The position numbers and the translations under genes are program-made. Under the pieces are notes generated by a model. That model was given only the letters and a program-made list of their open reading frames with translations, was not told the origin of the DNA and did no database searches. A DNA stretch of 64,000 nt from Octopus sinensis (Eukaryota), in assembly GCF_006345805.1 (NCBI RefSeq), contig NC_043006.1:67456001-67520000 (forward strand). Reading direction: 5' to 3'. Below, one piece after another: positions 7,311-63,538 of this stretch (its first letter is position 1; the number at the start of each line of letters is the position of its first letter).

Positions 7311-8762
7311 TGCTGATATGTTGCATTGAGACGATTTTCTTTGTGTAGCTTCGTGGGATTGCTTCGAGTTCAGCCGTTAATTTTATATTGTGTGGGGATC
7401 ATAGTTGGGCGCAGTAGGCCAAGTGGCTGAGGATTTATGCCCTCTAAAGGATCGACATTGTTTCTTCTCTCTCGTTTTGAAAGTCCGGATGATCCATCTA
7501 GCTTGCCGTCTGCATTATATTACCAAATTAGTAATATGCACCTGGAAAGATGCATTATTGCTCATGTAAATTTCCAGGTTACGCACTGGTTTTGATTCAT
7601 GGATTGCAATTCCTCCCGGGCCAGTGAATCCTGTGTGCATTTCATTCAGCTATATGTGCTGGTAGCGCAGGGCTTGGAATTTTCCTGCATTAAACTGCAT
7701 GTTGTTGTCCTCAGCTCACCTGTATATTGCGTCCAACTCCCGTTGCAAAAGCACAATATCTCCAAAATTTTGTATTGTCTGAGAGACTTTTGTGTCATCT
7801 GCATAGCTAATGATGGTGGCTATCTGAGCAGCTAAGTGTATGTCTGAGAGGTCCACTATAAATAACAGTGACCCTAAGACAGTGCCCTGTGGAACACCAC
7901 TTACTATTTGTGTTTCCTTTGAGGTGGCTCCATTGGCCACCACTGCCTGATGTCTATCTTTTAGAAAGTCGTGTAGTCACTCTCCTAGTTTTCCGACTAT
8001 GCTGAGATCACGTAGTGTGTGACATATCATACCATGGTGTACTTTATCAAAGGCGTTTGCAAAGTCGAGATATACCACATCCACACTTGAGTTGTTTAGA
8101 AGCTATTTTAACACCCAGTAAGAGCTGTAAGCTGGCGAGCAGGCAGAAACGTTAGCACGCGGGGCGAAATGCTTAGCGGTATTTCGTCTGTCTTTACTTT
8201 CTGAGTTCAAATTCCGCCGAGGTCGACTTTGCCTTTCATCCTTTCGGGGTCGATATTTTAAGTACCAATTGCGTACTGGGGTCGATCTAATCGACTACCC
8301 CCTTCCCCAAATCTTTCGGGCCTTGTGCCTAGAGTAAAAAAGAATATTATAACAGAGGTATCGGGCAGTTTCTACCTGGTCGAAATCTATGCTGACTGTC
8401 AGTCAGCAAGTCATTTTCTTCAAGGAACGCGATTAGTTTCTTGTGGTGTGTTCCTTCCATGACTTTGCTGATGAGCCAGGTCAGAGAAATAGGCCTATAA
8501 TTTTTAGCATCTGTTCAGCTTCCTCTCTTATAGATAGGGGCATACTATTCCTTCCTTCAATTTGTCTGGGAGCTTACCACTTGTAAAAAAGCTCTGAAAA
8601 AAAGCTGCAGTGGTTTTGCAAGGGCTCGTTTGCACGATTTGAGAAGGATTGCTGGAAATCCATCAAGGCCAGTAGCTGAGTTTTGTGTCAACCACATCTA
8701 TGGCCAGAGTCACATCGTCTTCTTTAATGTTGATGTAATCCATTTTCCCCTCTTTGGTTACA
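7311..8762 (-). mobile_element. Decayed CR1/Jockey-group LINE ORF2 (RT), interrupted by a SINE
   Basis: VDVVYLDFANAFDKV, SGVPQGTVLG, YADDTK and NYRPISLT on the minus strand, with stops and frameshifts. Confidence 0.9.
8131..8349 (+). mobile_element. SINE family A nested in the CR1-like LINE
   Basis: Full head and tail; TAA at 8128-8130 and 8350-8352; LINE sequence rejoins across the insertion. Confidence 0.85.
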
Positions 8763-10245: not shown

Positions 10246-11340
10246 TTAGGTTGGCAACTAAGCTCCTGCCGTTTTCTTAAATTTAATTTTTTTTTAATGT
10301 TTAATAAAAAATAATTTGTAGAAATCACCCGATTTCGACTCGAAAAAATGATCTAACCAAGCTCCTAATTCTGCATCAGTATTGAACGAAACTCCGCGCA
10401 TAGCATTTGAAAGAGATCAAAAGAGGTGGAAATCCGTTGGTGCCAAATCAGGAGAGTACGGGGGTGTTGCAGCCTTTCCCAGCGATGCGTTTGAAAGGCT
10501 TTTTTGGTCATTTTGGCGATATGAGGTCTGGCGTCGTCGTGCAGCAGAACTCCATGCTGCCGATTAGGTCTTTTCTCTTGAATAGCCGTGTTGAATCGTT
10601 CCATCTGTTGAACATAGAGTTCTGCGTTGACCGTTTGGTTCCGTTCAAGCAATTCGTAATGGATAATCCCTTCCCAGTCCCACCATACGCACAACATCGT
10701 TTTACGCGGATGAAGATCTTGTTTCACGCGCGATGTCGCTTGTTTACCGGGACTAAGCCATTCCTTATGCTGCTTCATATTGATGTACAAGCACCATTTT
10801 TTTGTCGCCAATAACGATCCGCTTGTGTTCATGAGTTGAGCGGTGACGAGCAAGCAAAGCAGCAGAGATTGTGGCTCGTTGATTTTTGTTGTTGTTACTT
10901 AAAGCATGCGGAACACATGCTCCATACTTCTGAACCTTTCCCATCGAGTGAAGATGCTTCTCTATGGCAGTGTGGGAGCATCCCATTTTCTCTTCTAGTT
11001 CCCTTGTCGTTTGGTGAGAATTTTCGTGCAAAAGTTGGCTTAATCGTTTTTCATCGAACACAACTGGACGGCCAGAACGAGGTACGTCTTTGCGGTAAAA
11101 ATTTCCATTTTTGAACTTGGCATGCCAATCATGAGCTGTTCTTTCAGCTATGGCACCCTCTCCATACACAGCACAAATGTCGCGAGCAGCTTTTGTGGCC
11201 TTAGAACGTTGATTAAAAGCAAAAAGGTGTCGAAAATGCTCGTTTTTCTTAACTTGACATTCCATTTTAATGATTTGAAAATAAACAAAAATTAACTAAA
11301 ATTAACTAGAAAAAAACAAAATAGATGGCCTGGTAAGTCA
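10246..11340 (-). mobile_element. Mariner (DD34D) element with frameshifted transposase; 5' TIR missing
   Basis: ORFs 10765..11265 and 10365..10853: ACVPH, GDEK-like, HDDARPH; TIR TA-TTAGGTTGGCAACTAAG at 10244. Confidence 0.9.
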
Positions 11341-29437: not shown

Positions 29438-29645
29438 GGTTTCAAATTTTGGCACAATGCCAGCAATTTCGGGGGGAGGGTTAAGTCGATTACATCGTCC
29501 CCAGTGCTCAACTGGTACTTATTCTATAGAGCCCGAAAGGATGACAGGTAAAATTCGACCTCGGCTGAATTTGAACTCAGAACGTAAAGTCGAACGAAAT
29601 GCTGCTAATCATTTTCCCCGGCGTTGTTAACGATTCTACCAGCCC
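29438..29645 (-). mobile_element. SINE family A
   Basis: Colinear with the family. Confidence 0.8.
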
Positions 29646-29647
29646 AT

Positions 29648-29851: not shown

Positions 29852-31113
29852 CATTAATCACTCGCCATATCGCGGTTTACCTATCACGCGCACTAGTAAA
29901 TCGCGAATTTTCTGGCTAATACATGTAAATTTATATCGCGGACTCCTCAGTATATCGCGGGTCTCTGCGGCCGATAAGTATTTATATCTCTTTAGATTTT
30001 ATTTATTTCTGTGGTAAAATAAGCATTTTCACATCTAATAATTAATAAACTAATGAATAAAAACACAGTACAGAACTTCAGTGTATTACACATTAATTAA
30101 AATATATTAAAAGAAAATACGTAGTGTACCGTAGTTGAGTAAACAAAGAATTGCACATACTGTAAGGTAAGCGAAACTCAGGAGGCGAGTGCGTGGTGTT
30201 GTTTTGCATTTGTGTGTAAAACTGTGAATTTATTTCAAGTCTTACGATGTCGCTCAAATGTTTTGTACCTTCTAAGCCTTTCTTCCTTACACAGAAGAAG
30301 AGGCAGCGCCAGCAACTGCCCATCATTATGTTCCTTACCCGCAAAAAATGAGAAGATACAGGTACTCCTTAGAGTGTGAGGAGAGTTTATAAAAGCTTAA
30401 GCGTATAAAAATATTGGGTTGTCCAGGAAGTTAGTGCCGATTTATAGTAGCTTACATTTCGACTTATTTTAGAATATGGTTGAGTCCATAAAATAGGATC
30501 TAACTACACCTCCATTTTGAGCACAGTTTAAGCTATCTTGTCGTGGAAGAAGGTTTATGTTCCTATAACCTGTGTTAGTTCTGTAACCCTTTAAAATGGA
30601 AGATAAGAAAGTTCATTTTCGACACTTGATGCTTTGGGAACCAGACAAAAATTGCTGCAGCTCGGCTGGGATGTGTTACCCCACCCGCCATATTCACCAG
30701 ATGTTGCTCCTTTGGATTTCCACTCATTGAGGTCTCTGCAGAATAGCCTTAATGGTAAAAATTTCAATTCCTTGGATGACGTAAAAAGATACCTTGATGA
30801 ATTCTTTGCCATGAAACCACCTCAATTCTGGGAAGAGGGTATTTTCAAGTTAAAGGAAAGATGGAAACGCATTGTGCAACAAAGTGGTTCATATTTGGTT
30901 GATTAAAATGTAATGGCAAGTATTTATTGACCTTTTCCTTTCCTTTAAAAATCGGCACGAACTTTCCGGACAACCCAATAATAAAATAAATATATACAAA
31001 TTATAAAAATATTTTTTTTAAAATATACAGTATAGTACTGTTTCTACTTCACGAATGTTCATCTATCGCGGGGTGTTTTGGAACGTAACACCCGCAATAG
31101 TCGAGTGGTTACT
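29852..31113. mobile_element. pogo/Tigger-like non-autonomous element carrying a nested mariner
   Basis: Degenerate TIRs TA-CATTAATCACTCG.. / ..CGAGTGGTTACTC-TA with subterminal TATCGCGG motifs. Confidence 0.55.
30414..30978 (+). mobile_element. Internally deleted mariner (565 bp), same family as 58156-59422
   Basis: TIRs TTGGGTTGTCC..GTGCCGATTT and TA TSD; MEDKKVHFRHLML fused to GTRQKLLQLGWDVLPHPPYSPD. Confidence 0.95.
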
Positions 31114-32499: not shown

Positions 32500-32961
32500 T
32501 TACACTTCCCTTAGGAATGCGCCAGCTCTAGGTCGTATCACAATTTGTGAATCGTCCTCAAAATAACTTGTGCCCGCACCCTCCGTCATCCACCACGCCT
32601 CCCTCAGAATGTAATCGAGTTCCGTGTTAGCGTCGCCCGGGACCAAGCTATAATCCTCATTGAGCTCCTTCAGCCCAAGCGTCACGTCGAACGCCACGGC
32701 CTCCACAGCTACCTGCAGAGGCCATTCGGGGTCCTGTGTCAAGGCTAAAGGTGCTCCCTTATGGTGCTTTTCCATCACCTTTTCAATTTCTCCGCCTCTA
32801 TGGAAGAGGATCAATACATCGTTTTTCCTCGGGGGCGGGATATTCAATTCTTTCGTTGGCGGCACAGTTCCCGCCAACGGTGTTTCTTCTCCTGTCGGTG
32901 GCACAACCCCAACCGACGTAGTTTCGGGACATTCCGGTACTATGTCACCGACTGCCGGCAA
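32500..32961 (-). CDS. Probable frameshifted C-terminal part of the same ORF1
   Basis: Open from the A-rich tract near 32990 in the -1 frame; joined length about 430 aa. Confidence 0.5.
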   Translation of the reverse strand: MPAVGDIVPECPETTSVGVVPPTGEETPLAGTVPPTKELNIPPPRKNDVLILFHRGGEIEKVMEKHHKGAPLALTQDPEWPLQVAVEAVAFDVTLGLKELNEDYSLVPGDANTELDYILREAWWMTEGAGTSYFEDDSQIVIRPRAGAFLREV

Positions 32962-33791
32962 CGTCCCGTTTCTCTTCCTCTTTTTCTTTTTTTCTTTTCA
33001 GCTGAGGGAGGGTGCGTCTCCTCCGTGGCCGGAAGATTCGCCTTTCCCTCCTCATCCCTAGTATCCTTTGGTGAGCACCCATTGTTGCTCACCTTCCTCT
33101 TTCGGCCTCTGTTTGAGGAGTCCTCCGCTTTCTCGGCCGTCTTCATTCCCTCTTCTACAGGGGTTTCACTTAACTGCTCCGGGATCCTATTTTGTTCCCG
33201 GGGACAGTTTTTCTTTATATGGCCGGACTCCAAGCACCGATGACACCTAGGGGGGCGACCCTCAAGTATCACCGGGTACCTGCACCCGGCCATTTTCAAA
33301 AAATCTGGAAGAACCAGATTGGCTGATTGGGTCCAAAGGGTCAAAATTGCTTTTGACCCAACCCAAACAGCCGCAGGAAGAACTTTCACATTAAGAACCT
33401 TAGTCCCGCTGCTACCCAGACCCCGGCGGATAGTCTCCTCTATCCACTCGGGTTTTATCCCGGGTGGCAGCCCGCAGATCCAAGCTTTCGTCAGTCTCTT
33501 TCCATGGTACGTGGGCAGAAATAAAATTTCCTTGCCCTCCAGGGGTTTACTAGCAAATTTGCAAGCCTCTTCAGGGGTGTCAAATAGCAACCACACCGTT
33601 GCATATCTGACACCCCTGGAAATGAATTTAATTGTTGGCAAATACTCTGCCAACTCCTTTTCAATTGCCGTCTTTTCGAATAGGGCGATGGAGTAGGTTC
33701 TCAACACCACCGTCCTATCTTCACGGTCTTTTAACCACTTTTTAGGCGGTATAATCTCCCATTCCAAAAGTTTGTCATTTTTCATTGCCAT
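32940..33791 (-). CDS. Tx1/L1-type ORF1p (nucleic-acid binding, CCHC knuckle), N-terminal part
   Basis: 283 aa; CHRCLESGHIKKNC; LPTYHGKR motif shared with 34213..34632. Confidence 0.8.
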   Translation of the reverse strand: MAMKNDKLLEWEIIPPKKWLKDREDRTVVLRTYSIALFEKTAIEKELAEYLPTIKFISRGVRYATVWLLFDTPEEACKFASKPLEGKEILFLPTYHGKRLTKAWICGLPPGIKPEWIEETIRRGLGSSGTKVLNVKVLPAAVWVGSKAILTLWTQSANLVLPDFLKMAGCRYPVILEGRPPRCHRCLESGHIKKNCPREQNRIPEQLSETPVEEGMKTAEKAEDSSNRGRKRKVSNNGCSPKDTRDEEGKANLPATEETHPPSAEKKKRKRGRETGRCRQSVT

Positions 33792-34129
33792 ATATTTTTT
33801 GTTTTTTTTTTAAATATATTCAAAATAAACTTAAAAAGCGAGAACAAAAAAGTTCAAAAGTCCTAATAAAATTCGATAGATTTTTTGAAAAAAATAGGGA
33901 AGATACAAAAAGGAGAAAGCACAACAGAAGGGAAGAAATCAACGGAAAGTCACAATAAACAAAAAAACAAAAAGGGGAGTTAAATAAAGTTCAAAAGAAA
34001 GTCAATAAACAGCAAAACACAGCAAAAATCTTCTGGCCTTACGGTACTCCCGGCCTGAGTTGAACCTGGAACGCCGCAACTGGAACGCAACTTCCACAAA
34101 AATTGGTCCAAAAGGTAATCCAAAAGTGT

Positions 34130-34260
34130 ATTCCAAATGGCTTATTCTTTACTTGGATGGAGAACAGGTGTGGTCACCGCACGTTCGGTTCTACCTTCCG
34201 CGATTAACGTCCTTAACGGACATTGGTAATTGGATCAAGCAGAGACCTAGGCTGGGGGAC
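34130..34260 (+). pseudogene. Tx1-clade ORF2 fragment
   Basis: YLDGEQVWSPHVR..WIKQRPRLGD vs LDDGEQVWSSFVR..WIKKRPRKGE at about 39700. Confidence 0.7.
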
Positions 34261-34665
34261 TTCACAGTCAGCTCGAATGTGGCCCTTTTTTCCGCATTGG
34301 TAACAGGTGGGCTTACGGCCTTCCACCTGTACCCTAAGGGCCACATTCTCCCCAACAAGTACTCTCTCTGGTAGGACCTGAATGCCCTCCTGTTTGCCTT
34401 GTATTAAAACCGTTATGTTCCGCCCTAACCACATCTGTGGGGCGGAACTTGTGGTCTGTAATATGTTTATCCGGTCCGTCCTGTTAAACAACAGGCCGGC
34501 TACCACTTCTTTCGGATCTACTGTGGGTGGGATTTCGTTAATCCTTACACGGGATGTTCGTCGCCCCCTGTACGTTGGCAAAAGTACCACTTCCTTGGTC
34601 TTCAGGGGGCACACGGCGTGCCCGCGAGCCACCTTTTCCTCTGAGAATTGAACCTCAACGGATCC
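34260..34665 (-). pseudogene. Second Tx1-type ORF1 fragment
   Basis: LLPTYRGRR..EGRKPTCYQCGKKGHIRADC. Confidence 0.8.
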
Positions 34666-34669
34666 GTAT

Positions 34670-34795
34670 GCCCGTTTATTTCTATGTTCCTTTCTGTCGA
34701 AGAGCTTAGGCTCGAAACGTAAAAGACTTTCTCACTTCTCACTTCTCGAACGTTAAACTAGTACATCTGTTTGTTGTTAACACACCCATCTTCGT
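34670..34795 (+). mobile_element. PLE terminal-repeat fragment with HHR-like fold (A6U)
   Basis: CTTT CTGTCGA A GAGC TTAG GCTC GAAAC GTA AAAG; ends at (TA)n. Confidence 0.6.
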
Positions 34796-34853: not shown

Positions 34854-35231
34854 GTGTATGTATATATATATATATATGTATGTGTATGTATGTATGTATG
34901 TATGTATATATGTATGTATATATATATACATATATATATACATATATATATATACATACACACATACATACATACATACATACATACATACATACATACA
35001 TACATACATACATACATACATACATACATACATAGTCTTGGTTCTGACATTAAACTGCACCGGGTGGTGAAGCTCCACCACGGGAGTTCTGGAATTGTGG
35101 GGGTGCGTGAACTGATCCTTTAATTACCATTATTCCCAGGTCCGTTCTGACTCAGAACGGTAACACCAGTAAGGGTCTCATCTGTTGATTAAATAGTTTA
35201 CCGATGGGTAGAGGAGGTTCCTGTCGTTATT

Positions 35232-35849
35232 CTTTTCTACTCTAGGTACAAGGCCCGACATTTTTGGAGAGAGGTGGGCCAGTCGATTAGATTGACCTCA
35301 GTACGCAACTGGTACTTAACTTATCGATCCCGAAAGGGTGAAAGGCAAAGTCGGCCTCTGCTTAATTTGAACACAGAACGTAAAGACAGACGGAATACCG
35401 CTAAGCATTTCGCCCGGCGTGCTAACGTTTCTTATTTCTTTATTGCCCACAAGGGACTAAACATAGAAGAAACAAACAAGGACAGACAAAGGGATTAAGT
35501 CGATTACATTGATCCCAGTGCGTAACTGGTACTTAATTTATCAACACAGAAAGGATGAAAGGCAAAGTCGACTTCGGCGGAATTTGAACACAGAACGTAA
35601 CGGCAGACGAAATACCTATTTCTTTACTACCCACAAGGGGTTAAACACAGAGAGGACAAACAAGGACAGACAAACGGATTAAGTCGATTACATCGAACCC
35701 AGTGCGTAACTGGTACTTATTTAATCGATCCCGAAAGGATGAAAAGCAAAGTCGACCTTGACGGAATTTGAACACAAAACGTAACGGCAGACAAAATACC
35801 GCTAAACATTTCGCCCGGAGTACTAACGTTTCTGCCAGCTCGCCGCCTT
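35232..35849 (-). mobile_element. SINE family A trimer with two Tx1-like tails
   Basis: TSD GAGGTTCCTGTC[G/A]TTATT at 35214 and 35850; junctions at 35431/2 and 35615/6. Confidence 0.9.
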
Positions 35850-36169
35850 GAGGTTCCTGTCATTATTGATAAAGCCGTATGGAAGGCAGCTCTTCTAAGA
35901 GAAAGATATAAAACGAGTCGTCTTGCAGTGCTTCTTATTGGAATGTACTATAGCGACCGGGAAAGTAGCTAAGGTGTTGTACAAGCTTAAATCCAATGAA
36001 GCACAGATGTGTCACTGTCATTTCATTTCCTCATCCAGTTTGTATTTCATAAAATTCTGTGGTGATGGATGCGTGATGAAAAAAAAAATAGTCATAAATG
36101 CGTACATGAAAGAATGAAAGTAAAGTGGAACAAGCAGGCTGAAATGTATAACGGCTATCATCTGACGAG

Positions 36170-36606: not shown

Positions 36607-36715
36607 ATAAGTCATCAATATTTCAGTACTGGCCTAGATTTTTTTTCATTTACATTGATTTCTATTTAAATCTTAAAAGAAATCAATGAAAAAGAGAAAA
36701 ATATTTATTATAGTC

Positions 36716-38230
36716 GAAGGCGTGGCTGTGTGGTTAGAAGCTTGTTTCCCAGCCACATGCTTCCCGGGTTCATCCCTCAGCGTGGCACCTTCAACAAGAC
36801 TACCGTCTACACTCCCACCACGGAGCAGATTCCCGTCGATGTACAACTGCTGGTAGCTCAACAAACACTTGCCAGCCTACCCAATTCCCCTGACGTATTC
36901 TTTTACACTGATTGCTCGACTAGAGAAGGCACAACCAACGGCGGAGCCTGTGTGGTAGTGCTGATACACGATGCGGTGGTCCTCGAGCGGCACGCCCCGA
37001 CTAGAGCTCACAGCAACTCATTCCACTCAGAGCGAGCAGCATTTAACGAAGCCCTCCGGTGGCTACAAGCCAATGACAACCGGGCCTCCACAACTACAGT
37101 TTGCGATTGCAAATCATTAGTTGAAGCGTTAGACAACCCGTTCCCAAGACTCGACAATTAGAGAATTGCAACAAACAGCAGCCCTAGTAGAAGCTGGCAA
37201 GATTTTGACGGTGATCTGGGTGCCGGGCCATTGCAACCTCCGCGGCAATGAACTCGCAGATATGCAGGCAAAACGTGGCTCGGTGCTGCCACAACCGGAT
37301 GCCGCCATCGATACAGCCATTCGTCAGGCGGTTATTCGTCGAACGTTCCAGCCAACGCCAATTCAACACCCTCGTCTGAAGGAAGTCTTCACAAAGAAGC
37401 CGGATGAAAGAACCGAAGCAGCCCTCTCGAAGGTAGACTTCACAGACATGATACGCTTCCGTAGTGGTCATCATCCGGCGCTCAGGCGGTGGCAAAAGAT
37501 GGCAGAATGCAGCGACACAGATCAATGCAGACTCTGTAACGAGGAGGTGGAATCTGCTGAACATCTCTGGCTGAGATGTCCGGCCGATTGTTGAACGCTA
37601 TATCCGCCAACTAGGGGCTACAATGGATGAGATGATTCGTCTCCCTTCCGCGGCTCTAGCGCTTCTGAGGTGGCCAACAACAATAATAACAACAACAACA
37701 ACAACAGCCTTCAGCAAGTGTCTTCTTCTATAGCCTCGGCCCGACTAAAGCCTTTTCAGCGGATTTTGTAGACAGAAACTGGATGAAGCCTGTCGTATAT
37801 ATATATATCCTTTTACTTGATTAAAGTCAATTTGACTGTGGTGATACTCGACCACCACCTTAAATGCGTGTGTGTGTGAGTGTGTATATGTATATATGCG
37901 TGTGTGTGCATGTGTGTGTGTATATGTGTGAGTGTATATATAGATGTGTGTGTGTGCGTGCGTGTATATTTATGTGTGTATGCATGTGTGAGTGTGTGTA
38001 CATGCCTTTGTGCCTGTGTTCGTCGCCTCCGCAATCACTTCCCAACCGATGTTGGTGTGTTTACATCCCTGTAACCTAGCAGTTCGGCAAAGACACCGAT
38101 AGAATAAGTACTAGACTTACAAAGAATAAGTCCTGGTGCCGGAGTCCTGCGTGCGATTTCTTTGGTTAAAAATCCTTAAAGGTGGCACGCCAGCATAGCT
38201 GCAGTCAAATGACTGAAACAAGTAAAAGAA
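36716..38230 (+). mobile_element. SINE family B interrupted by a LINE and microsatellites
   Basis: Head 36716-36798; body resumes at 37708; 3' domain 38030-38230. Confidence 0.8.
36799..37707 (+). mobile_element. 5'-truncated I-group LINE (RNase H plus CCHC) with (AAC)n tail
   Basis: YTDCS..GGA, ERAA, DCKS, WVPGHCNLRGNELAD, CRLC..HLWLRC; TSD CCTTCA[A/G]CAAG. Confidence 0.88.
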
Positions 38231-38271
38231 TAAAAGAATAGATAGAGAGAGAGAAAGAGAGAGAGAGAAAC

Positions 38272-38350
<79 letters not shown>

Positions 38351-38358
38351 TAGATAGG

Positions 38359-38421
<63 letters not shown>

Positions 38422-38422
38422 T

Positions 38423-38501
<79 letters not shown>

Positions 38502-38511
38502 GTAGATAGAT

Positions 38512-39707
38512 GTTTCTTTATTAGCCACCAGGGGGCACTGCACACAGATAGAACAAATTACAAGGTAGAGCTTTTCTTTTGGGGGTAAAAAAAAAGGGAG
38601 TGGTGGTTTTCGATCAAAAGGGATCGTAAAAGGAAAGAAAGAGGACAAAAAAAAAGGGAGGGGTAATAAAAAAAAAAAAAAAGGTGGGGGGAGAGCAAAA
38701 AAATTGATCAATAGGGATCGTTATCACAGAAATGTCAATATGAAGTGTAAAGGGGAGAACAGGTGAGGTTTACCCGTGGAAAGAAAAGCCTACGGAAAAG
38801 ACCACGGTAACCTCGGTCAATGAAGTCACATGTTATATTTCTTTCTTTTTTTGCAAATAAGCAACTCTCTGTATTAATTTTACGGTTCATAGAATCATAG
38901 TCAAGGTGGCTTCGTCATTCATACGTGCCATCCTTGCTACATTCACCCATCTTTTTTTTAAAACATTCACTAGACAAAACTTGCCTCTCTACTCTCACTT
39001 TCCTCTTCAAGTGATACTTGAAGAAGTTGATGAGAGATTGACCAGAGAGGAAAGTGTTTGTCTCTAATCCTTTCAGGCGCGTCCACCAGATACATTCTTT
39101 CGCCATAGCCACAAGTATGATAAAAATAGCTCTTCCTTCCCGTTTGAAGGAAGGAGGCGCGTGACGATATTAACGATAGACTCGGCTGATAAACCGACAC
39201 GTCCCACACGTGACAGCAGTCGTTCGACATAAGCCCACAGGTCGGAAATTGCTGGACACTGCACGATTGCGTGCAGAGCGGTTTCGTCGCTCTGCCCACA
39301 TCTCGGGCAGGTCGGCCCGTGTTTCTCGAGCCATGCCTATAGAGCTTATCCCGAACGGGCTAGCGCTTTCGGTAGCACCGCCAGGCAGGGATCTCTGGAA
39401 GTTGTCCATAGGTCCCGGGCCGAAAGTCGTTTGAAACAGGCGGGTCAGGTATTCCTCGTCGACGCCCAGGTTTGCCCGAGCTCGTCGTCGTACTCCCCTC
39501 CACTAATCCCCTATAGAATGCTTTGGTTGTGTTGAAGTCACTCAAGGTCGACCCGGGACGGGAGAGTTGCTTGAGAGCAACGCGACACTCGCGGTGCCAT
39601 TCGCCCTTCCTCGGCCTCTTTTTGATCCACGACTGTAGTTCGGTCATGGAGACGAGTTGCGGGAATGCGTGCCTCACAAACGACGACCACACCTGTTCAC
39701 CGTCGTC

Positions 39708-41810: not shown

Positions 41811-42176
41811 ATATTTTCTACACTAGGCACAAGGCCCGAAATTTTGGGGAGGGGGACTAGTCGATTAGATCGACCCTAGTATGCAACTGGTACCTAATTT
41901 ATCGACCCCTAAAAGATAAAAGGCAAAGTCGACTTCGGAGGAATTTGAACTCAGAACGTAAAGAGAGACGAAATACCTATTTCTTTACTACCCACAAGGG
42001 GCTACACACAGAGGGTCAAACAAGGACAGAAAAACGGATTAAGTCGATTATATCGACCCCAGTGCGTAACTGGTACTTATTTAATCGACCCTGAAAGGAT
42101 GAAAGGCAAAGTCGACCTCGGCGGAATTTGAACTCAGAACGTAGCGGCAGACGAAATGTCGATAAGCATTTCGCCC
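41811..42176 (-). mobile_element. SINE family A dimer with Tx1-like tail
   Basis: Junction gacgaaatac|ctatttctttac at 41976/7. Confidence 0.85.
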
Positions 42177-42290
42177 TTTTAATCTGAGGTCGTGGGTTCG
42201 TGTCCCCCTGTGGGCGAAGGCAGATTTTTACTTCAGCATGGCCGCAGCCTTCGGGCTAAAACATTTTAAAGGATTTTAAGGATTTAAGGA
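42177..42290 (+). mobile_element. tRNA-Lys-derived fragment plus short SINE-B-like tail
   Basis: TTTTAATCTGAGGTCGTGGGTTCG..TGGGCG resembles the tRNA-Lys 3' half; followed by cagcatggccgcag. Confidence 0.6.
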
Positions 42291-50994: not shown

Positions 50995-51005
50995 TATTAT
51001 AGATC

Positions 51006-51067
<62 letters not shown>

Positions 51068-51122
51068 CAGGCAGACAGACAGACAGACATGTAGGTAGGT
51101 AGGTGAGTAAGTAGATAGATAT

Positions 51123-51749
<627 letters not shown>

Positions 51750-51819
51750 CAGACATGGACAACTGTAGTATTCTTAAAACTTTGAGATGCTGTTCATAAA
51801 TTTCTATATCTTAGCTATG

Positions 51820-54335
51820 TTAGCATTAAAGCAAAACTGGAAAGATATGACAATAGAAAAAGACAGTTCAGGCAAAACAAATTGTTTGAAGGGAATCAGA
51901 AGAAACTGTTTCAGGAACTAGATGGGCAATTGCAAGTAACGATGAAACCAGATGCAGAGAAAAGCTGAGCATTCTGGAGAGGGATCTGGGACCAACCTTT
52001 GGAGCATAATGATGAGCATAATCATGCAGCCATTCCGCGGAATGGCTACATGAAATCCAAGATAGGTTAAGAAATATAGAAGGCTAAGAAAACATAACGA
52101 TAACTACAAAAATAATAAAAAGGCAGTTTAAAATATTGCCAGATTAGAAGAGGCCAGGACCGGATGGGGTCCAAAATTATTCATGAAAGGATAGCACTAC
52201 AGCTAGATGAATGCATCCAGAAAGGTGCAGTACCCAGCTGGATGGCAAAGAGAAAGACATTGTTGTGTGCCAAGGATCCTGAAAAGGGAAAGGTTGCATC
52301 CAACTTTAGATAAATAAGTGCCTTCCGCTAATATGGAAACTAATATCAGGTGCGTTGGCCGGTGAACTATATAGATACCTGGAAATCAGTGGGCTACTAC
52401 CTATTGAACAGAAAGGGTGACGGAAGAGGAGCCGGGGAATAAAAGATCAGCACTTTTTTGATAATCTAATTATCAGGGACTGCAAGAGAAAACACATAAA
52501 CCTGAGCATGGCACGGGTTGACTAAAATAAAGCATACGGCATGATACCACACTCTTGGATAATAAAAACAATGGAAATGTATGGAGTAGCAGAAAATATG
52601 AGAAAATATGAGAATATATGAAATGGTGAAGAAGGGAATTGACAGCAGGGAATCAAGTATTAGGAGAGGTGAATATCAAGAGAGGTGCCTTCAAGGGGGG
52701 CAGAGTGTCCCCACTGATTTTCGTGCTGGGAATGATCCCCTTGAGTGAAATACTACAGACAACCAAGTTGGGGTATGATCTGGGAAGCGGTAAGGGAAAA
52801 CTGAACCACTTGCTATTCATGGACGACTTGAAGCTATCCACAAAAACTGACGCAGAACTGGATATCATAATCCAGTCTGTGCGGATTTTCTCCAATGATA
52901 TTAAGATGGAGTTTGGACTCTAAAAATGTGCTGCGATAGTGATGAGACGAGGAAAGCTTTTCAGAACAGAATGTTACCAAGTGGTGAAATGATGAAGGCA
53001 ATTCAACCTCAATCCAGCTATAAATACCTGGGAATACTTGAGACAGATGGAATCAAACGCACTGACATGAAGGAAAAGACAACAAGAGAGTACCAGCGGC
53101 GAGTGAGAAAAATATTGGCTTCAAAGCTAAATACCAGAAACATAATTTCGGCAATAAACTTGCGCGCAGTCGCAGTAGTTCGGTATGGCACTGGAATCCT
53201 GAAGTGGACCGAGGAGGAACTAAAGATGATGGACAGGAAGTCAAGAAAGCTCCTAATGATGCATGGAGCTCATCATCCACGTGCAGGCACTGATCACCTA
53301 TACATGAAAAGAGCAAATGGAGGAAGTGGACTGATAAGTGTGGAAGACTGCGTGCGTATCGAACTCGAGAGCTTAATGAAATACCTATCCCAAAGTAAGT
53401 AAACCTTGCCAGTAACTGTTAGGAACGAAGGGGTGTTGAAAGCAGAGAAAAAAGGAAAAACAAAGAAAGAAGTGCAAAAAGGACATGAAGAAGAATTACG
53501 CAAGAAGGGACTACACAATCAATTCCATGGAGCCACAACAGAAGTTGCACGAAAAAATAGGAGGTTTTGGCTGATGAGAAGACCATTAAAAAAGGAGACC
53601 GAGAGCACAATACTGGCAGCGCAAGACCAAGCTTTGACTACGAACTGGAGGGTCAATCTTAGGAATGAGCAAGTGTCTCCGCTGTACCGCATCTGCAATA
53701 GAGTGGATGAAACCAGTGCCCATATCAAGAATGAATGCCCTAGACTCATCCAAAACCACTACAAGCTGCGAAAAGTGGGAGCTAGAGAGAAGCAAGACGG
53801 AGAGAGAAGCAAGACGGAGAGAGAAGCAACTACAGAGAGTATCAAGCGCAGAGAGTGGTGGAGTCAGAGACAAACAAAATCCTCTGGGATTTCCCAATCC
53901 AAACAGATCAGGTGCTAGAGCATAACAGATGGGATCTAGTGGTGGTGGACAGGATGCATCACATATGCTGTATAGTTGATTTTGCATGCCCATTTGACCC
54001 AAGAAGGAAGGCGAAAAGGAAGATAAATAAAACGCTCTTAAGTACGAAATAGCCCAGCTATAGAAAAATCAAGAAGGTGAAGATAGTGCCAATTATTGTA
54101 GGGTCTTTAGGGACAGTGTCAGAAGACATCAGGGTGAATATAAAAGAAATTGAAATAGTGCCCAGTAGAACTGTTACAAAAGGTTTGCCTCCTTCGCACG
54201 GCCAGAATAATAAGGAATGTATTAGATAGCTGAAAAGAATGGATAGTATGGTACCGTAGGGTGCAGGTCGCAAAACCGCCACGCATGCAAGACTCCAGGA
54301 GTTCCAGCAAAACCTGGGATAAAGAGAAATAATAA
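51820..54335 (+). mobile_element. Decayed 5'-truncated R4/Dong-clade LINE (RT plus restriction-like endonuclease)
   Basis: PGPDG, KAYGMIPHSW, NHLLFMDDLKL, YKYLG, GGSGL, KILWDFPIQTD, DLVVVD..IVDFACP, RTARIIRNVL*; short (AAT)n tail. Confidence 0.92.
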
Positions 54336-54652: not shown

Positions 54653-55730
54653 TTCATTCGTTTGTTGGCCACAAGGGCTTACATAAAATTATATTAAGAG
54701 ACACAACAACATAAAAGACAAAGACAGGACGATATAATGGGTTTTACAACGTGTAAACAATATAATAACAATTAAAATTACACAATTTAAAACTCCCAAT
54801 AAGGAAGGCGCATTAAGGACCTAGTGAAAAAACCCCACAAAAGTCACCCCGAGCACTAGGGCAAATTCCCTTTCCTTATCCTCTTCCTTCAGTCAATAGG
54901 CGCATGCTTAGAGCTGGCCTTTTCACTTGGACAATCGTTGCCACATCCATACACCATTCAACAAAATTGCTGAGAAGGACAGCACTTCTCTCTCTACGTT
55001 CACTTTAATTTACGATGTGACTTGAAAAAACTTACGAGAGCTTGACCAAAGAGAGAAGTGTCTGTCTTCAGCTCTTTCAGTCAGGTCCACCACGCAATCT
55101 CATTCAAATAAACACTGCCTGCCCTTACCGGCCAAAGGAAGGTGGTGCGACGATCTTCGCACAACTGACTCAGCCCATAGCCGGATCCTTCCTACACTTA
55201 ACAATCAGTAAATCTCGGGTACAGTCGGAATGCATACAAAGAAGTTTCGTCGCTCTGCATGCATCTTGGAAAGGCCCAACTGAAGTTTCTCTTGAACCAG
55301 CAATTCTCCTACCACACAACAGGTAGTACTGCAAAGCTAGGGATTTGTGGAAATTATACATGGACCCCAGCCTAAAACTTGATTCTCGTTGATACCCAGA
55401 GTCTCCCCTAGAACGTCGTCGCCTTTGCTCGCCACTAAACCTCTACTGAACGCCAAACTGGAACTGCCACTAAATGCATTGTCCGACTGGTAGAGGACTG
55501 AGTGCATGACACCATTGTAGGTGCCAGGCGCCCTGCCTCAGTCTTCGCTTGATCCAGGTCTGCAGCTCAATCAAAAGAGACGAGAGGCAGAAGAAGCGGA
55601 TCTGACAAACGGCGATACCTGCTTACCGTCAAGGAAACGCTGGAGGTGTCTCAGTGCATGTGTGCGCATCATCAGCCACGGAATGCACAGTCCTCCATTC
55701 AGCGAGTGTTGACAACAACAAATGGAGTAC
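54653..55730 (-). mobile_element. Second Tx1-clade LINE family, 5'-truncated, 3' end next to (ATT)n
   Basis: CCQHSLNGGLCIPWLMMR..HLQRFLDGKQV.., LSGQALVSFF; 3' end AGCCCTTGTGGCCAACAAACGAATGAA. Confidence 0.8.
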
Positions 55731-55935
55731 GTAAAGACGGGCGAAATGCCGCTAAGTAGTTTGCCCAACTAGCTAACGATTCTGCCAGCTCGCCGCCTTA
55801 AGCACAATGCCTGAAGTTTCGGGGGAGGGGACTGGTCGATTAGATCTACCCCAGTGCGTAACTGATATTTATTTTATTGATCTTAAAGGATGAGAGCCTG
55901 TATTAACCTCAGCAGGGTTTGAACACAGAACTTAA
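55731..55935 (-). mobile_element. SINE family A head (55731-55800) and a second headless copy
   Basis: Direct match to the family. Confidence 0.7.
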
Positions 55936-56019
55936 ACTTAAGAAGCCGGAACAAAAACTTACGGACGTATAATACTAGTGATAAAATTTAACTGTGAATC
56001 GACAACAGCTGTTGAATTC

Positions 56020-56405
56020 TTTTCTACTCTAGGCACAAGGCCCAAAATTTTGGGGGTGGGGGCCAGTCGATTAGATCGACCCCAGTGCGCAACTAGTACT
56101 TAATTTATTGACCCCGAAAAGATGAAAGGCAAAGTCGACCTCGGCGGAATTTGAACTCAGAATATAAATACCTATTTCTTTATTACCCACAAGGGGCTAA
56201 ACATAGAGGGGACAAACAAGGACAGACATAGGTATTAAGTCGATTACATCGACCCCAGTGCTTAACTGGTACTTAATATATCGACCCCGAAAGGATGAAA
56301 GGCAAAGTCGACCTCGGCGGAATTTGAACTCAGAATGTAGCGGCAGACGAAATACTGCTAAGCATTTCTCCCGGCATGCTAACGTTTCTGCCAGCTCACC
56401 GCCTT
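56020..56405 (-). mobile_element. SINE family A dimer with Tx1-like tail and 16-bp TSD
   Basis: TSD AACAGCTGTTGAATTC at 56004 and 56406; junction aaatac|ctatttc at 56171/2. Confidence 0.92.
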
Positions 56406-56702
56406 AACAGCTGTTGAATTCACAAAGATAAACATTTTCTTCAAGTAAATATTGTATATTATTTAATTCTTTCAAATAAAAGTAGATTTATCAATATTTG
56501 CATGGAATATAAACTAAATTTAAGAGATCCATCTCGCCTGTGACGTAAGGTGGGTAGGTCCTACTGTCTTATGTTAACAGCTATATTTTTCATGTTCGCT
56601 GTTATATTCAAGAAACGTCGACCCAACGTTGGTCAAATGACCTAAGCTCTTCGATTATATTCCATAAACAAAGAAAGAAAGAAAGAAAGAAATCATTATC
56701 AA

Positions 56703-57914: not shown

Positions 57915-58117
57915 GCACGAGGCCAGCAATTATTTCGTGGGGAGAGTGAAGTCGATTACAACGACCCCAGTGTTAAACTAGCCCTTATTTTAACGACTCC
58001 CAAAGGATGAAAGGCAAAGTCAACCTCGGCGGAATTTTAACTCAGAACGTAAAGACAGAGGAAATGCCGCTAAGCATTTTGTCCGGCGTGTTAACGATTC
58101 TGCCAGCTCGTCGCCTT
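57915..58117 (-). mobile_element. SINE family A
   Basis: Colinear with the family. Confidence 0.82.
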
Positions 58118-58155: not shown

Positions 58156-59422
58156 TTGGGCTGTCCGGAAAGTTCGTGCCGATTTTTAAAAGAAAGGAAA
58201 AGGTCAATAAATACTTGCCATTTCATTTTTAATCAACCAAATATGAACCATTTTGTTGCACAATGCGTCTCCATCTTGCCTTTAACTTGAAAATACTCTC
58301 TTCCCAGAATTGAGGTGGTTTCATGGCAAAGAATTCATCAAGGTATCTTTTTATGTCATCCAAGGAATTGAAATTTTTACCATTAAGACTATTCTGCAGA
58401 GACCTCAATGAGTGGAAATCCGAAGGAGCAATATCTGATGAATATGGCGGGTGGAGTAACACATCCCAGCCGAGCTGCAGCCATTTTTGTCTGGTTCCCA
58501 AATAATGTCTGGCATTATCATGTTGGAAAACAACACCCTTCTTGTTGGTTAATTCTAGATGTTTCTCTTGAATTGCTGCTTTTAACTCGTCCAGTTGTGT
58601 GCACTATTTCTCGAATTAATTGTCTGGTTACTTGGGAGAAGCTCATAGTACAGAATTCTTTTCCAATCCCACCAGACAAAGCAAGACTTTTTTAGGGTGA
58701 AGACCCGCTTTGGGGTTAGCTAAGGGTGGCTCATGTCGCTTACTCCAGGATCGCTTTCTCTGAACATTTCGGTAGACAATCCATTTCTCATCGCCTGTCA
58801 CAATCTGCTTCAAAAAAGGCGCGTTTTCATTCCGTTTATAAAGCGAATCACAGATGGAAATGCAATCCAAAAGGTTCTTCTCACTCAGCTCATGTGGTAC
58901 CCAAACATTGTAGCGATTTGTGTATCCAAGCTTTACCAGGTGCTCACGAAGATAGATTTTGATAGGTTGAGGCTTTCTGCAAATTCTCGGGTTGTGCAAT
59001 GTGGATTATTCTCAAATAATGACTTGATTTGGTCATCATCTGTAGTGGATGGTCTGTCTGATCGTTCTTTATCAATAAGGCTACAGCTGGGAGCCTTGCG
59101 AACCACTTCCGTACAGTTCTTTCGGATAAAGAACCATCACCGTAAACTACGCATATTTCTTTGGTTGCTTGCGAGGCGTTTTCCCCTTTACGGAAAAAGA
59201 AAAGCATTAAGTGCCGAAAATGAACTTTCTTATCTTCCATTTTGAATAGTCACAGAATTAACACAGGTTATAGGAACGTAAACCTTCTTCCACGAAAAGA
59301 TAGCTTAAACTGTGCTCTAAATGGAGGTGTAGTCAAATCCTATTTTATGGACGCAACCATGTTCTAAAATAAGTCGAAAGGTAAGCTACTATAAATTGGC
59401 ACGAACTTTCCGGACAACCCAA
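58156..59422 (-). mobile_element. Full-length mariner (1267 bp) with frameshifted DD34D transposase
   Basis: TIRs, TA TSD; MEDKKVHFRHL, WVPHEL, IVTGDEKW, HPPYSSDIAPSDF. Confidence 0.95.
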
Positions 59423-62672: not shown

Positions 62673-63087
62673 TAATATATGTGTGTCTGGGTATTGTGTA
62701 CACAGCACATTCACAAGCACAAGTAGACAGACTTGTAGATTTCTTTTTAAAAAACAAGTCTAGAGTTGTTTGCTTAGAGAAAGCTATTTTTCGCTCTCTA
62801 TGAATTTCTTGGTAACAAGCAGGAGCATTTGTTATGGTAGTAGAAATGTATGCACTTCGTTCAAAATTTGGATCTTGTGCTTAAAAAAATAAAACTCGTA
62901 AGCCTGGGGTCTCGTAAAGCGGAACCAAATAAAGTGAGGTATTACTGTACAAAACTCCGGCGTTAGAATGTAGATAACAAATCAACGTAATGCTTTGAAT
63001 TTAAGTCTCGCATATTTTTACTGTTCCACCTATAGACTGCATTCGTGATATGTCCGCTAACTGTTTGATTCGAAAACGCTGTCTATC

Positions 63088-63147
<60 letters not shown>

Positions 63148-63204
63148 CTATCTATCTATCTACCCATCTACCTATCTATCTATCTATCTATCTATCTATC
63201 CATC

Positions 63205-63538
63205 CAAACACTTTCCTCTCTGGTCAATCTCTCATCAACTTCTTCAAGTATCACTTGAAAAGGAAAGTAAAAGTAGAGAGGCAAGTTTTGTCTAGCGAAT
63301 GCTTCAAAAAAAGATGCGTGAATGTAGCAAGGATGGCACGTATGAATGACGAAGCAACCTTGAGCATAATCCTATGAACCCAGAAAAATTTAAAACAGAG
63401 GGTTACTTACTTGCAAACAAATGTGTTAACATGTGACATTATTGACCGATGTTACCGTAGTCTTTTCCGTAGGCTTTCTTTCCACGGATAAACCTTATCT
63501 GCTTCCCGCTTTATACTTTACATCATGACATTTCTGTG
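63205..63538 (+). mobile_element. Tx1-clade (GATA-associated) LINE fragment, copy 3
   Basis: Matches the reverse complement of 38730-39060; 5' side abuts (ATCT)n; 3' end lost. Confidence 0.82.

What the first reader, a model, noticed from the sequence alone, without database searches (positions are those of the whole stretch)
35232..35849. SINE-A multimers built with a Tx1-like tail at a fixed site inside the SINE's own head
Three loci (35232-35849 trimer, 41811-42176 and 56020-56405 dimers) contain units ending in an alternative tail, ..TCTGTGTTTAGCCCCTTGTGGGTA[A/G]TAAAGAAATAG. At all three loci this tail joins the same position, G^GTATTTC; a second site (^GAAACG) is also used at 35431. The tail resembles the 3' ends of the Tx1 LINEs in this window (TCTGTGTGCAGCCCTGTGTGGCTAATAAAGAAAC at 51123; AGCCCTTGTGGCCAACAAAC at 54660). 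Tailed units carry CGGCAGACG, while terminal units mostly carry AGA[C/G]AGACG. TSDs of 16-18 bp enclose whole multimers. Inference: either a Tx1-mobilised SINE variant inserts site-specifically into SINE-A heads, or a multimeric master element exists.
Basis: partly seen in the sequence, partly recalled or inferred. Interest (0 to 1): 0.8.

Follow-up and report, generated by a model that had tools for sequence, protein, structure and literature searches.

The report
Composite octopus SINE multimers, fixed joints
Three places in this octopus-type window hold two or three short mobile elements (SINEs) fused head-to-tail at the same internal positions and pasted in as one piece, which points to RNA-level fusion of SINE copies, not to a Tx1-driven element homing into SINE heads.

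Summary
The sequence observation holds. Three loci on the minus strand carry SINE multimers in which units ending in an alternative "B" tail (..CCCCTTGTGGGTARTAAAGAAATAG) are followed by a head-truncated unit. The joint is at position 48/49 (G|GTATTTC) three times and at 14/15 (|AGAAACG) once.

The B tail shares 42 nt with the 3' end of a ~550-bp repeat at 38512 and 51123 (0 of 2000 shuffles reach the score). Nothing shows that repeat is a LINE or Tx1. It has no ORF and lies inside (CTAT)n microsatellites.

Target-site duplications flank the whole trimer and one dimer, with none inside. Units within a multimer are equally diverged. An O. bimaculoides locus holds a B monomer with a terminal B tail and its own TSD at a non-SINE site. 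So B is an ordinary SINE subfamily, and the multimers were integrated as single cDNAs rather than by insertion into resident heads.

Both joint positions recur in other octopod contigs, including an array of at least six units, with different partner subtypes. This favours recurrent RNA-level joining (RT template switching or multimeric source RNAs) at two hotspots. Descent from a few masters remains possible. I rate it a new variant of a known kind, of moderate interest.

The parts
35232..35849 (-). SINE trimer: U1 35616-35849 (full-length, B tail), U2 35433-35615 (from position 49, B tail), U3 35232-35432 (from position 15, ordinary A tail)
   Evidence: unit divergence from subfamily consensus 8.5 / 7.6 / 9.3 %
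35214..35231 (.). Target-site duplication of the trimer, 3' side of the element (GAGGTTCCTGTCGTTATT)
   Evidence: matches 35850-35867 at 17 of 18
35850..35867 (.). Target-site duplication of the trimer, 5' side of the element
41811..42176 (-). SINE dimer: U1 41977-42176 (B tail, 5'-truncated at position 32), U2 41811-41976 (from position 49, A tail); no TSD
   Evidence: divergence 6.0 / 7.6 %
56020..56405 (-). SINE dimer: U1 56172-56405 (full-length, B tail), U2 56020-56171 (from position 49, with positions ~55-67 deleted, A tail)
   Evidence: divergence 5.1 / 6.5 %
56004..56019 (.). Target-site duplication of the 56-kb dimer (AACAGCTGTTGAATTC), 3' side
   Evidence: 16 of 16 with 56406-56421
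56406..56421 (.). Target-site duplication of the 56-kb dimer, 5' side
38512..39062 (-). Full-length copy of a ~550-bp non-coding repeat ('e-element'). Its last 42 nt are homologous to the B tail. It is followed by (CTAT)n.
51123..51625 (-).
63205..63538 (+). Third, 3'-disrupted copy of the same repeat. Its 5' end abuts (TCTA)n and coincides with that of the 38-kb copy.
54660..54704 (-). 3' end of a single-copy sequence with a weakly similar tail (AGCCCTTGTGGCCAACAAAC), followed by (ATT)n
   Evidence: p about 0.006-0.011; no other copy found

Best explanation
Shown:
- The three loci are composite copies of an abundant octopod SINE, each integrated in one target-primed reverse-transcription event. 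That event was primed from the ordinary A tail of the last unit.
- The upstream units belong to a normal SINE subfamily (B). Its 3' 42 nt come from, or are shared with, a microsatellite-embedded ~550-bp repeat.
- B copies also exist as monomers with a terminal B tail and their own TSD.

Inferred:
- In the multimers, the natural 3' end of a B unit (...AAAGAAATA) is joined, with zero or one extra base, to an internal position of the next unit. That position is 48/49 or 14/15.
- The joints were made on RNA or cDNA, not by cutting a resident SINE. Most likely the reverse transcriptase, having copied a SINE template up to one of two preferred breakpoints, continued on the 3' end of a B-tailed RNA (template switching).
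- Once formed, multimers carry the first unit's promoter region. They can be transcribed as one RNA and copied again as units.

Unexplained: why the B tail is the preferred acceptor. Its end GAAATA mimics the 5' arm (CGAAATGC) of a 13-bp hairpin predicted in the head, and the 48/49 joint falls exactly at the start of the hairpin's 3' arm.
For: - TSDs flank whole multimers at two loci, with none at internal joints.
- The first unit is full-length or simply 5'-truncated. Later units are head-truncated.
- Units within a multimer are equally diverged, and the three multimers differ in age in parallel for the A and B parts.
- O. bimaculoides holds a B monomer with a terminal tail and a 15-16-bp TSD at a non-SINE site. 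Terminal B tails also occur in L005 and L008.
- The same two joint positions occur in independent octopod contigs: L005 (site 1), L006 (site 2), L007 (array of at least six units, five site-2 joints) and L008 (site 2 with a 14-nt A-rich filler).
- Units in the L007 array are star-like: 57-67 % identical to each other and 65-74 % to the consensus. So they were not made by recent local duplication.
- Site 1 occurs with two B subtypes upstream and with either A-type or B-type units downstream. The trimer combines B subtype 1, B subtype 2 (the subtype of the O. bimaculoides monomer) and A.
- Terminal A units of the two dimers share no excess of derived changes.
- B tails are followed by a truncated unit in 4 of 5 cases, against 1 of 14 for A tails, in the window plus L003.
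- The hairpin and the palindromic joint are predicted by folding.
Against: - No RNA evidence is available.
- Three multimers among about twelve SINE loci is far more frequent than known template-switch chimeras. That favours amplification of multimeric source elements by descent.
- The sample is small: 4 joints in the window and about 10 elsewhere. The Logan contigs were picked because their ORFs showed tail-like peptides, so the frequencies are biased.
- The species behind the Logan and ENA contigs are unknown.
- Site 2 is not in a loop in the minimum-free-energy fold.
- The hairpin shows no covariation.
- The head is not recognised as a tRNA, so arguments based on tRNA-like processing are unsupported.
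- Acceptor specificity for the B tail has no demonstrated mechanism.
Confidence: 0.5

Rival explanations
1. Pure descent. One or a few multimeric master SINEs arose by rare accidents and amplified. An example is a B copy that landed in a SINE head and whose read-through transcript acquired the host's A tail. The fixed joints are then identical by descent, and heterogeneous partners reflect later recombination or conversion between SINE RNAs.
For: - Multimers are frequent among SINE loci (3 of about 12 in the window).
- TSDs flank whole multimers.
- Joints are identical to the base at three loci.
- Both joint types are old and present in diverged copies elsewhere.
- Tail subtype and joint type are loosely associated: GTART with site 1, GCAAT with site 2.
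Against: - Site 1 is linked to at least two B subtypes and to both A-type and B-type downstream units.
- The trimer mixes site 1 and site 2.
- Terminal A units of the two site-1 dimers share fewer than two derived changes, no more than random A copies.
- The middle unit of the trimer matches the subtype of a free B monomer.
Confidence: 0.3
2. A B-tailed SINE, mobilised by a target-specific (Tx1-like) LINE, inserts at each locus into the head of a resident SINE at G|GTATTTC. The 5' join is made in register by homology between the B cDNA and the host head, which erases the usual traces.
For: - The B tail shares its 3' 42 nt with a repeat embedded in (CTAT)n microsatellites, as target-specific LINEs are.
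- Joints recur at the same base.
- There is precedent: Tx1-Mar LINEs and SINEU target one Mariner family (PMC4494074).
Against: - No RT ORF and no Tx1 assignment for any tail donor. Full-length LINEs reported in octopus are RTE and Dong (PMC9115989).
- No internal TSD and no duplicated head.
- The presumed host parts are not older than the inserts.
- B monomers insert at ordinary non-SINE sites with TSDs starting AATA.
- The joint contexts C|GGT and C|AGA differ from those sites.
Confidence: 0.1
3. DNA-level events at each locus, namely tandem duplication, replication slippage or unequal crossing-over within or between SINE copies, built the arrays after a single insertion.
For: - Arrays of up to six or more units with a uniform period exist (L007).
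- The joint is palindromic (GAAATAGGTATTTC) and lies next to a predicted hairpin, a context prone to slippage.
Against: - Units of one multimer belong to different subfamilies and carry different tails (A against B, B1 against B2).
- Units in L007 are no closer to each other than to the family consensus.
- The trimer has two different joints, which a single unequal exchange cannot produce.
Confidence: 0.05

Closest known systems
Complex (dimeric or trimeric) SINE families as defined in SINEBase, e.g. Alu, B1-dID, Twin SINE (PMC3531059)
   Same: Two or three SINE-derived units are joined head-to-tail and copied as one element, with TSDs around the whole.
   Different: Here only the first unit keeps its head. 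Later units start at one of two fixed internal positions. Unit number varies from 2 to at least 6. Units of different subfamilies are combined. The internal joint always follows one particular tail type.
Template-switch chimeric retrocopies (U6-L1 and snRNA-Alu chimeras of Buzdin 2002 and Garcia-Perez 2007; 5' additions to SINEU), as summarised in PMC4494074
   Same: The 5' part is a complete small Pol III-type RNA ending at its natural 3' end. The 3' part is a 5'-truncated retroelement with the priming tail. One TSD pair flanks the chimera.
   Different: Known chimeras are rare and their breakpoints are scattered. Here the breakpoints cluster at two positions, donor and acceptor belong to the same SINE family, and chimeras are common.
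SINEU / Tx1-Mar: SINEs mobilised by target-specific Tx1-clade LINEs into one transposon family (PMC4494074)
   Same: A SINE is repeatedly found joined to a specific site of another mobile element. Relatives in the clade target microsatellites, as the tail-donor repeat here appears to.
   Different: In SINEU the target transposon flanks the insert on both sides. Here the 5' flank is unique DNA with a TSD. No Tx1 RT is linked to the tail, and the B SINE also inserts at non-SINE sites.
End-to-end template jumping of non-LTR reverse transcriptases in vitro (R2; recalled from memory, not checked here)
   Same: It would produce concatemers of complete 3' ends joined to template 5' ends, with occasional extra nucleotides, like the filler seen in L008.
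   Different: It is an in-vitro property. There is no evidence here for RNA 5' ends at positions 15 and 48.
CORE-SINEs; octopus OR2 (Ohshima and Okada 1994, cited in PMC4758252)
   Same: The body (..TTTCATCCTTTCGGGGTCGATAAATTAAGTACC..) resembles the CORE domain as I recall it. OR2 is an octopus CORE-SINE.
   Different: Identity with OR2 could not be tested because no OR2 sequence was available.

Membership tests
SINE (SINEBase definition) | Short (<1 kb) interspersed repeat in many copies | tested here: met
   About 14 loci in the 64-kb window, 20 BLAST matches in 76 kb of O. bimaculoides and 4 cores in L004.
SINE (SINEBase definition) | Head derived from tRNA, 7SL or 5S RNA with an internal Pol III promoter | tested here: inconclusive
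   A-box-like and B-box-like motifs are visible (GAGCTGGCAGAA, GAGTTCAAATTCC). ARAGORN finds no tRNA. Rfam gives no tRNA match even at E<=10 on a young copy.
SINE (SINEBase definition) | Insertion by LINE machinery: TSDs and a 3' tail shared with a partner LINE | tested here: inconclusive
   TSDs of 15-18 bp were found. The B tail is shared with a ~550-bp non-coding repeat. No coding LINE with either tail was found.
Complex (multimeric) SINE family | The same composite structure at several loci, each with its own TSD around the whole | tested here: met
   Three loci in the window, two with independent TSDs, plus similar composites in L005-L008.
Complex (multimeric) SINE family | Copies descend from a multimeric source gene, so units form joint-specific clades | tested here: inconclusive
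   The few units available show no clade of multimer units. A genome-wide phylogeny was not possible.
Tx1-clade LINE or Tx1-mobilised SINE | Partner element encodes an RT that groups with the Tx1 clade | not testable with these tools
   No ORF is attached to any copy of the tail-donor repeat or to the 54660 element. No octopus repeat library was available.
Tx1-clade LINE or Tx1-mobilised SINE | Target specificity: the same target sequence flanks the insert on both sides (more than 20 % of copies, the criterion of PMC4494074) | tested here: not met
   3' flank: a SINE head fragment follows all 4 window B tails. 5' flank: unique DNA with a TSD, never the missing part of the head. The B monomer in L003 sits at a non-SINE site.
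Template-switch chimeric retrocopy | The 5' partner is complete to its natural 3' end, the 3' partner is 5'-truncated and carries the priming tail, and a single TSD pair is present | tested here: met
   The trimer and the 56-kb dimer fit. The B tail ends at ..GAAATA both in multimers and when terminal.
Template-switch chimeric retrocopy | Independent events: variable breakpoints and variable partner combinations | tested here: inconclusive
   Partners vary. Breakpoints cluster at two positions, with outliers near 113 (L002) and near 19 with filler (L008).

The most novel reading that the evidence does not exclude
Octopod SINE RNAs have defined internal 5' ends, at positions 15 and 48, the latter at the edge of a head hairpin loop. 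The partner LINE's reverse transcriptase jumps in vivo from these ends onto the 3' end of B-tailed RNAs. The terminal GAAATA of those RNAs mimics the hairpin's 5' arm. The result is concatemers of up to six or more units that are themselves transcribed and re-copied, a self-propagating way of making new composite SINEs.
Probability: 0.2. Interest if true: 0.7.

Novelty: new variant of a known kind. Interest (0 to 1): 0.45.

Why it matters
Composite SINEs and template-switch chimeras are both known. It is unusual to find a family in which one tail type is joined again and again to the same two internal positions of sister units, producing dimers to hexamers in several octopod genomes.

If the joints are made recurrently, they are a natural record of how a non-LTR reverse transcriptase changes templates in vivo. 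They would also show how new composite SINEs are born, in a lineage where SINEs make up a large part of the genome.

If the joints are inherited, the finding is just the description of a dimeric SINE subfamily. In either case the Tx1 homing idea should not be carried forward without an RT sequence.

Tried and rejected
1. Searching public DNA for more copies. Two metagenome scans, one genome-contig scan and one viral scan with tail or core patterns all found nothing.

2. Using the window's LINE RT fragment to reach octopus contigs. The best hit came from an unrelated invertebrate assembly with no octopus SINE.

3. Word-indexed protein searches with SINE-encoded peptides. Each gave one hit. The exhaustive HMMER search then gave 13 hits, and these opened the way to O. 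bimaculoides and Logan contigs.

4. Looking up window ORFs and UniRef-only proteins by identity. None was on record.

5. tRNA ancestry of the head. ARAGORN and Rfam found nothing.

6. Covariation support for the head hairpin. There was none.

7. Literature search for the sequences themselves and for the run accessions. Nothing relevant turned up.

8. A simple nested insertion of a full-length B unit. Rejected because no second head and no internal TSD exist.

9. A deletion between direct repeats in a [B][full SINE] tandem. Rejected because the predicted joints (..AAAGAAATGCTTAGC.. or ..AATAAAGAAACG..) are not the ones observed.

10. Microhomology between the tail end and the two joints. There is at most 1 nt, so it is not explanatory.

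11. A versus B tail homology. Not significant by shuffling, although both contain a CTTGT-loop hairpin.

Full report
**What is there.** The window is octopus-type DNA. The only database protein matching a peptide encoded by the alternative-tail unit is an Octopus bimaculoides entry. The same SINE fills two O. bimaculoides chromosome stretches fetched later.

The SINE lies on the minus strand at all three loci. Read on its own strand, a unit has three parts:
- a head (positions 1-48, ..GCTTAGCG);
- a body starting GTATTTCG and ending ..GGGGTCGAT[C/G]TAATCGACT (to about position 166);
- one of two tails. The common A tail is ..GGGCCTTGTGCCTAGAGTAGAAAAGAA. The 66-nt B tail is TAATCCGTTTGTCTGTCCTTGTTTGTCCCCTCTGTGTTTAGCCCCTTGTGGGTARTAAAGAAATAG.

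The unit layout of the three loci is:
- Trimer 35232-35849: B(1-232) | B(49-231) | A(15-214).
- Dimer 41811-42176: B(32-232) | A(49-211).
- Dimer 56020-56405: B(1-232) | A(49-214), with a small deletion after the joint.

The B tail occurs only these four times in the window and is never terminal here. Three of four joints falling on one base out of about 214 has a chance of about 9e-5 (my arithmetic).

**Target-site duplications.** The trimer is flanked by GAGGTTCCTGTC[G/A]TTATT (17 of 18). The 56-kb dimer is flanked by AACAGCTGTTGAATTC (16 of 16). Exact matches of at least 16 nt between random flank pairs in this microsatellite-rich window occur in about 1 % of trials. The 41.8-kb dimer is 5'-truncated and has no TSD. 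No duplication surrounds any internal unit.

**The tail and the 'Tx1 LINE' claim.**
- The last 42 nt of the B tail are homologous to the 3' end of a repeat present three times in the window: 38512-39062, 51123-51625, and partly at 63205-63538. The score is 39-41 against 13 +/- 2.3 in shuffles, with 0 of 2000 reaching it.
- That repeat is about 550 bp long. Two copies share the same 5' end. It has no reading frame and gives no Pfam hit nearby.
- It is embedded in (CTAT)n microsatellite on the 3' side in two of two copies and on the 5' side in two of three.
- That flanking pattern is what microsatellite-targeting or microsatellite-generating LINE families produce. Nothing here assigns the repeat to Tx1. 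The paper I read on octopus LINEs reports RTE and Dong as the full-length elements (PMC9115989).
- The 54660 tail is only weakly similar (p about 0.006-0.011), and its element is single-copy in all data I held.
- The RT fragment at 52.1-54.3 kb lies on the other strand and ends elsewhere.

**B is an ordinary SINE subfamily.** In O. bimaculoides (L003, 40605-40899, minus strand) a B unit with a full head ends ..GGGCAATAAAGAAATA. It is flanked by AATA[C/A]TATAAGGCCTA on both sides, at a site with no other SINE. Terminal B tails also occur in two Logan contigs (L005, L008). So the B tail can prime integration at ordinary sites. Those sites start with AAT, as do the sites used by A tails in the window.

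**Were B units inserted into resident heads?** The evidence says no, at least not in any simple way.
- A full-length B unit inserted at 48|49 would leave host head, TSD, B head ... B tail, TSD. There is only one head and no internal TSD.
- Leave-one-out divergence from the subfamily consensus is the same for all units of a multimer: trimer 8.5 / 7.6 / 9.3 %, dimers 6.0 / 7.6 % and 5.1 / 6.5 %. It differs between multimers in parallel for the A and B parts. That pattern is expected if each multimer arrived as one piece.
- The joint contexts (C|GGTA, C|AGAA) do not resemble the |AAT sites used by terminal tails.
- A homology-guided version of homing cannot be excluded. It needs extra assumptions at every locus.

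**One master or recurrent joining?**
- Both joints recur outside the window.
  - L005: B | unit from about position 49 (central GG lost), ending in a terminal B tail.
  - L006: B | unit from position 15 with an A tail.
  - L007: at least six units with five joints at positions about 12-21, the last unit A-tailed.
  - L008: B tail, a 14-nt A-rich filler, then a unit from about position 19.
  - L002: B followed by an older-looking A fragment from about position 113.
- Units in the L007 array are less similar to each other (57-67 %) than to the family consensus (65-74 %). So the array was assembled from consensus-like units and did not grow by recent local duplication.
- In the window, the first units of the trimer and of the 41.8-kb dimer share a B subtype (GTAGT, TCTGTGT, GATTAAATAAG) but are joined at site 1 to different partners: a B unit of another subtype in one case and an A unit in the other.
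- The trimer's middle unit shares four derived states with the free O. bimaculoides monomer.
- The first unit of the 56-kb dimer is a further subtype.
- The terminal A units of the two site-1 dimers share fewer than two derived changes.
- In the unbiased sample (window plus L003), 4 of 5 B tails are followed by a truncated unit, against 1 of 14 A tails. Two A tails are instead followed by a full-length SINE.

Together this favours repeated formation of joints at two preferred positions, specific to the B tail. The high frequency of multimers also argues that, once made, they are transcribed and copied as units. Descent from a few masters remains a serious alternative at about 0.3.

**Mechanism.** My preferred account is RNA-level chimerisation.
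1. Reverse transcription starts at the A tail on the target nick.
2. It copies a SINE template up to position 48/49 or 14/15.
3. It continues on the 3' end of a B-tailed RNA, possibly more than once.
4. The cDNA is integrated with one TSD pair.

This is the architecture of known template-switch chimeras (summarised in PMC4494074).

An observation that may bear on site choice: the head is predicted to form a 13-bp hairpin (positions 31-43 with 48-60, loop UAGC). Site 1 is the first base of its 3' arm. The B-tail end GAAATA mimics the 5' arm CGAAATGC, so the joint GAAATAGGTATTTC is itself a small palindrome.

This hairpin rests on prediction only. It is present in 88 % of cells across 14 copies but shows no compensatory changes. 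Site 2 is not in a loop in the minimum-free-energy fold. The head is not recognisably a tRNA. Why the B tail, and not the more abundant A tail, is the acceptor is unexplained.

**Comparison and novelty.** The closest known things are:
- complex SINEs (PMC3531059);
- template-switch chimeric retrocopies;

The present case differs from the first two by its fixed internal breakpoints, tail specificity, variable unit number and mixing of subfamilies. It fails the SINEU-type test because the target does not flank the insert on the 5' side. No paper in the searchable library contains these sequences. I could not consult Repbase or Dfam, where a dimeric octopus SINE consensus may already exist.

**Verdict.** This is a real and non-random structure and a new variant of a known kind. 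The Tx1 homing reading is not supported. The multimer-as-unit reading is supported. Whether the fixed joints are hotspots or are inherited needs a genome-wide census.

Noticed in passing
window 38238-39062, 50999-51753, 63082-63538: A ~550-bp non-coding repeat sits inside (CTAT)n/(TAGA)n microsatellite on both sides. This suggests a microsatellite-targeting or microsatellite-generating retroelement. No copy is present in 76 kb of O. bimaculoides.
   Followed up: partly
window tails at 8314-8344, 35616-35660, 51123-51167, 54660-54704, 29440-29480: All SINE and repeat tails contain a small hairpin with a conserved CTTGT-type loop and different stems. The stems are GGC/GCC in the A tail and the third tail type, CCC/GGG in B, and GCC/GGC in the ~550-bp repeat and the 54660 tail. 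These look like compensatory changes in a shared recognition motif. The count was made by eye only.
   Followed up: no
L003 65993-66572; window 55742-55930: Full-length SINEs inserted exactly at the 3' end of an older SINE's tail (..AAGAATAT|AAGGCGGCG..) give head-to-tail arrays of complete units. This kind of tandem differs from the B multimers.
   Followed up: partly
L003 69652-69760: An A tail is followed by an old SINE unit starting near position 19. In that unit the head's GCTTAGCGG has grown into (GGTTAG)n, a telomere-like repeat, at the position of the predicted hairpin loop.
   Followed up: no
L007 (Logan SRR11869384 contig, 1985 bp): An array of at least six head-truncated SINE units has two internal partial duplications of the tail. 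One is TATGGGCAATAAAATGAT repeated about 40 nt apart.
   Followed up: partly
window 32940-34731 (-): Two tandem gag-like ORFs carry CCHC zinc knuckles. One is intact at 283 aa. No RT follows, there is no Pfam hit beyond zf-CCHC, and the ORF is not on record in the protein-position index.
   Followed up: partly
window 52100-54335 (+) and 36670-37591 (+): These are decayed LINE fragments. One is an RT with an FMDDLKL box, whose relatives are spread across invertebrate assemblies at up to 56 % identity. The other is an RNase H / zf-RVT end.
   Followed up: partly
window 10365-11295 (-), 30607-30903 (+), 58232-59249 (-): Mariner-type transposase remnants are present. HTH_48 and Transposase_1 hits occur at the first site.
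   Followed up: no
window 42177-42240 (+): A tRNA-like T-arm sequence (GAGGTCGTGGGTTCGTGTCCCC) abuts the truncated 5' end of the 41.8-kb dimer. It is probably another SINE type or a tRNA pseudogene.
   Followed up: no
window 29440-29646, 57950-58115; L009 290-480: A third SINE tail type (..GCTGGCATTGTGCCAAAATTTGAAAYC) sits on the same head and body.
   Followed up: no
L003 40786-40797: The O. bimaculoides B monomer contains a run of 10 N, with SINE positions 46-100 repeated on either side. This is probably an assembly gap artefact.
   Followed up: no
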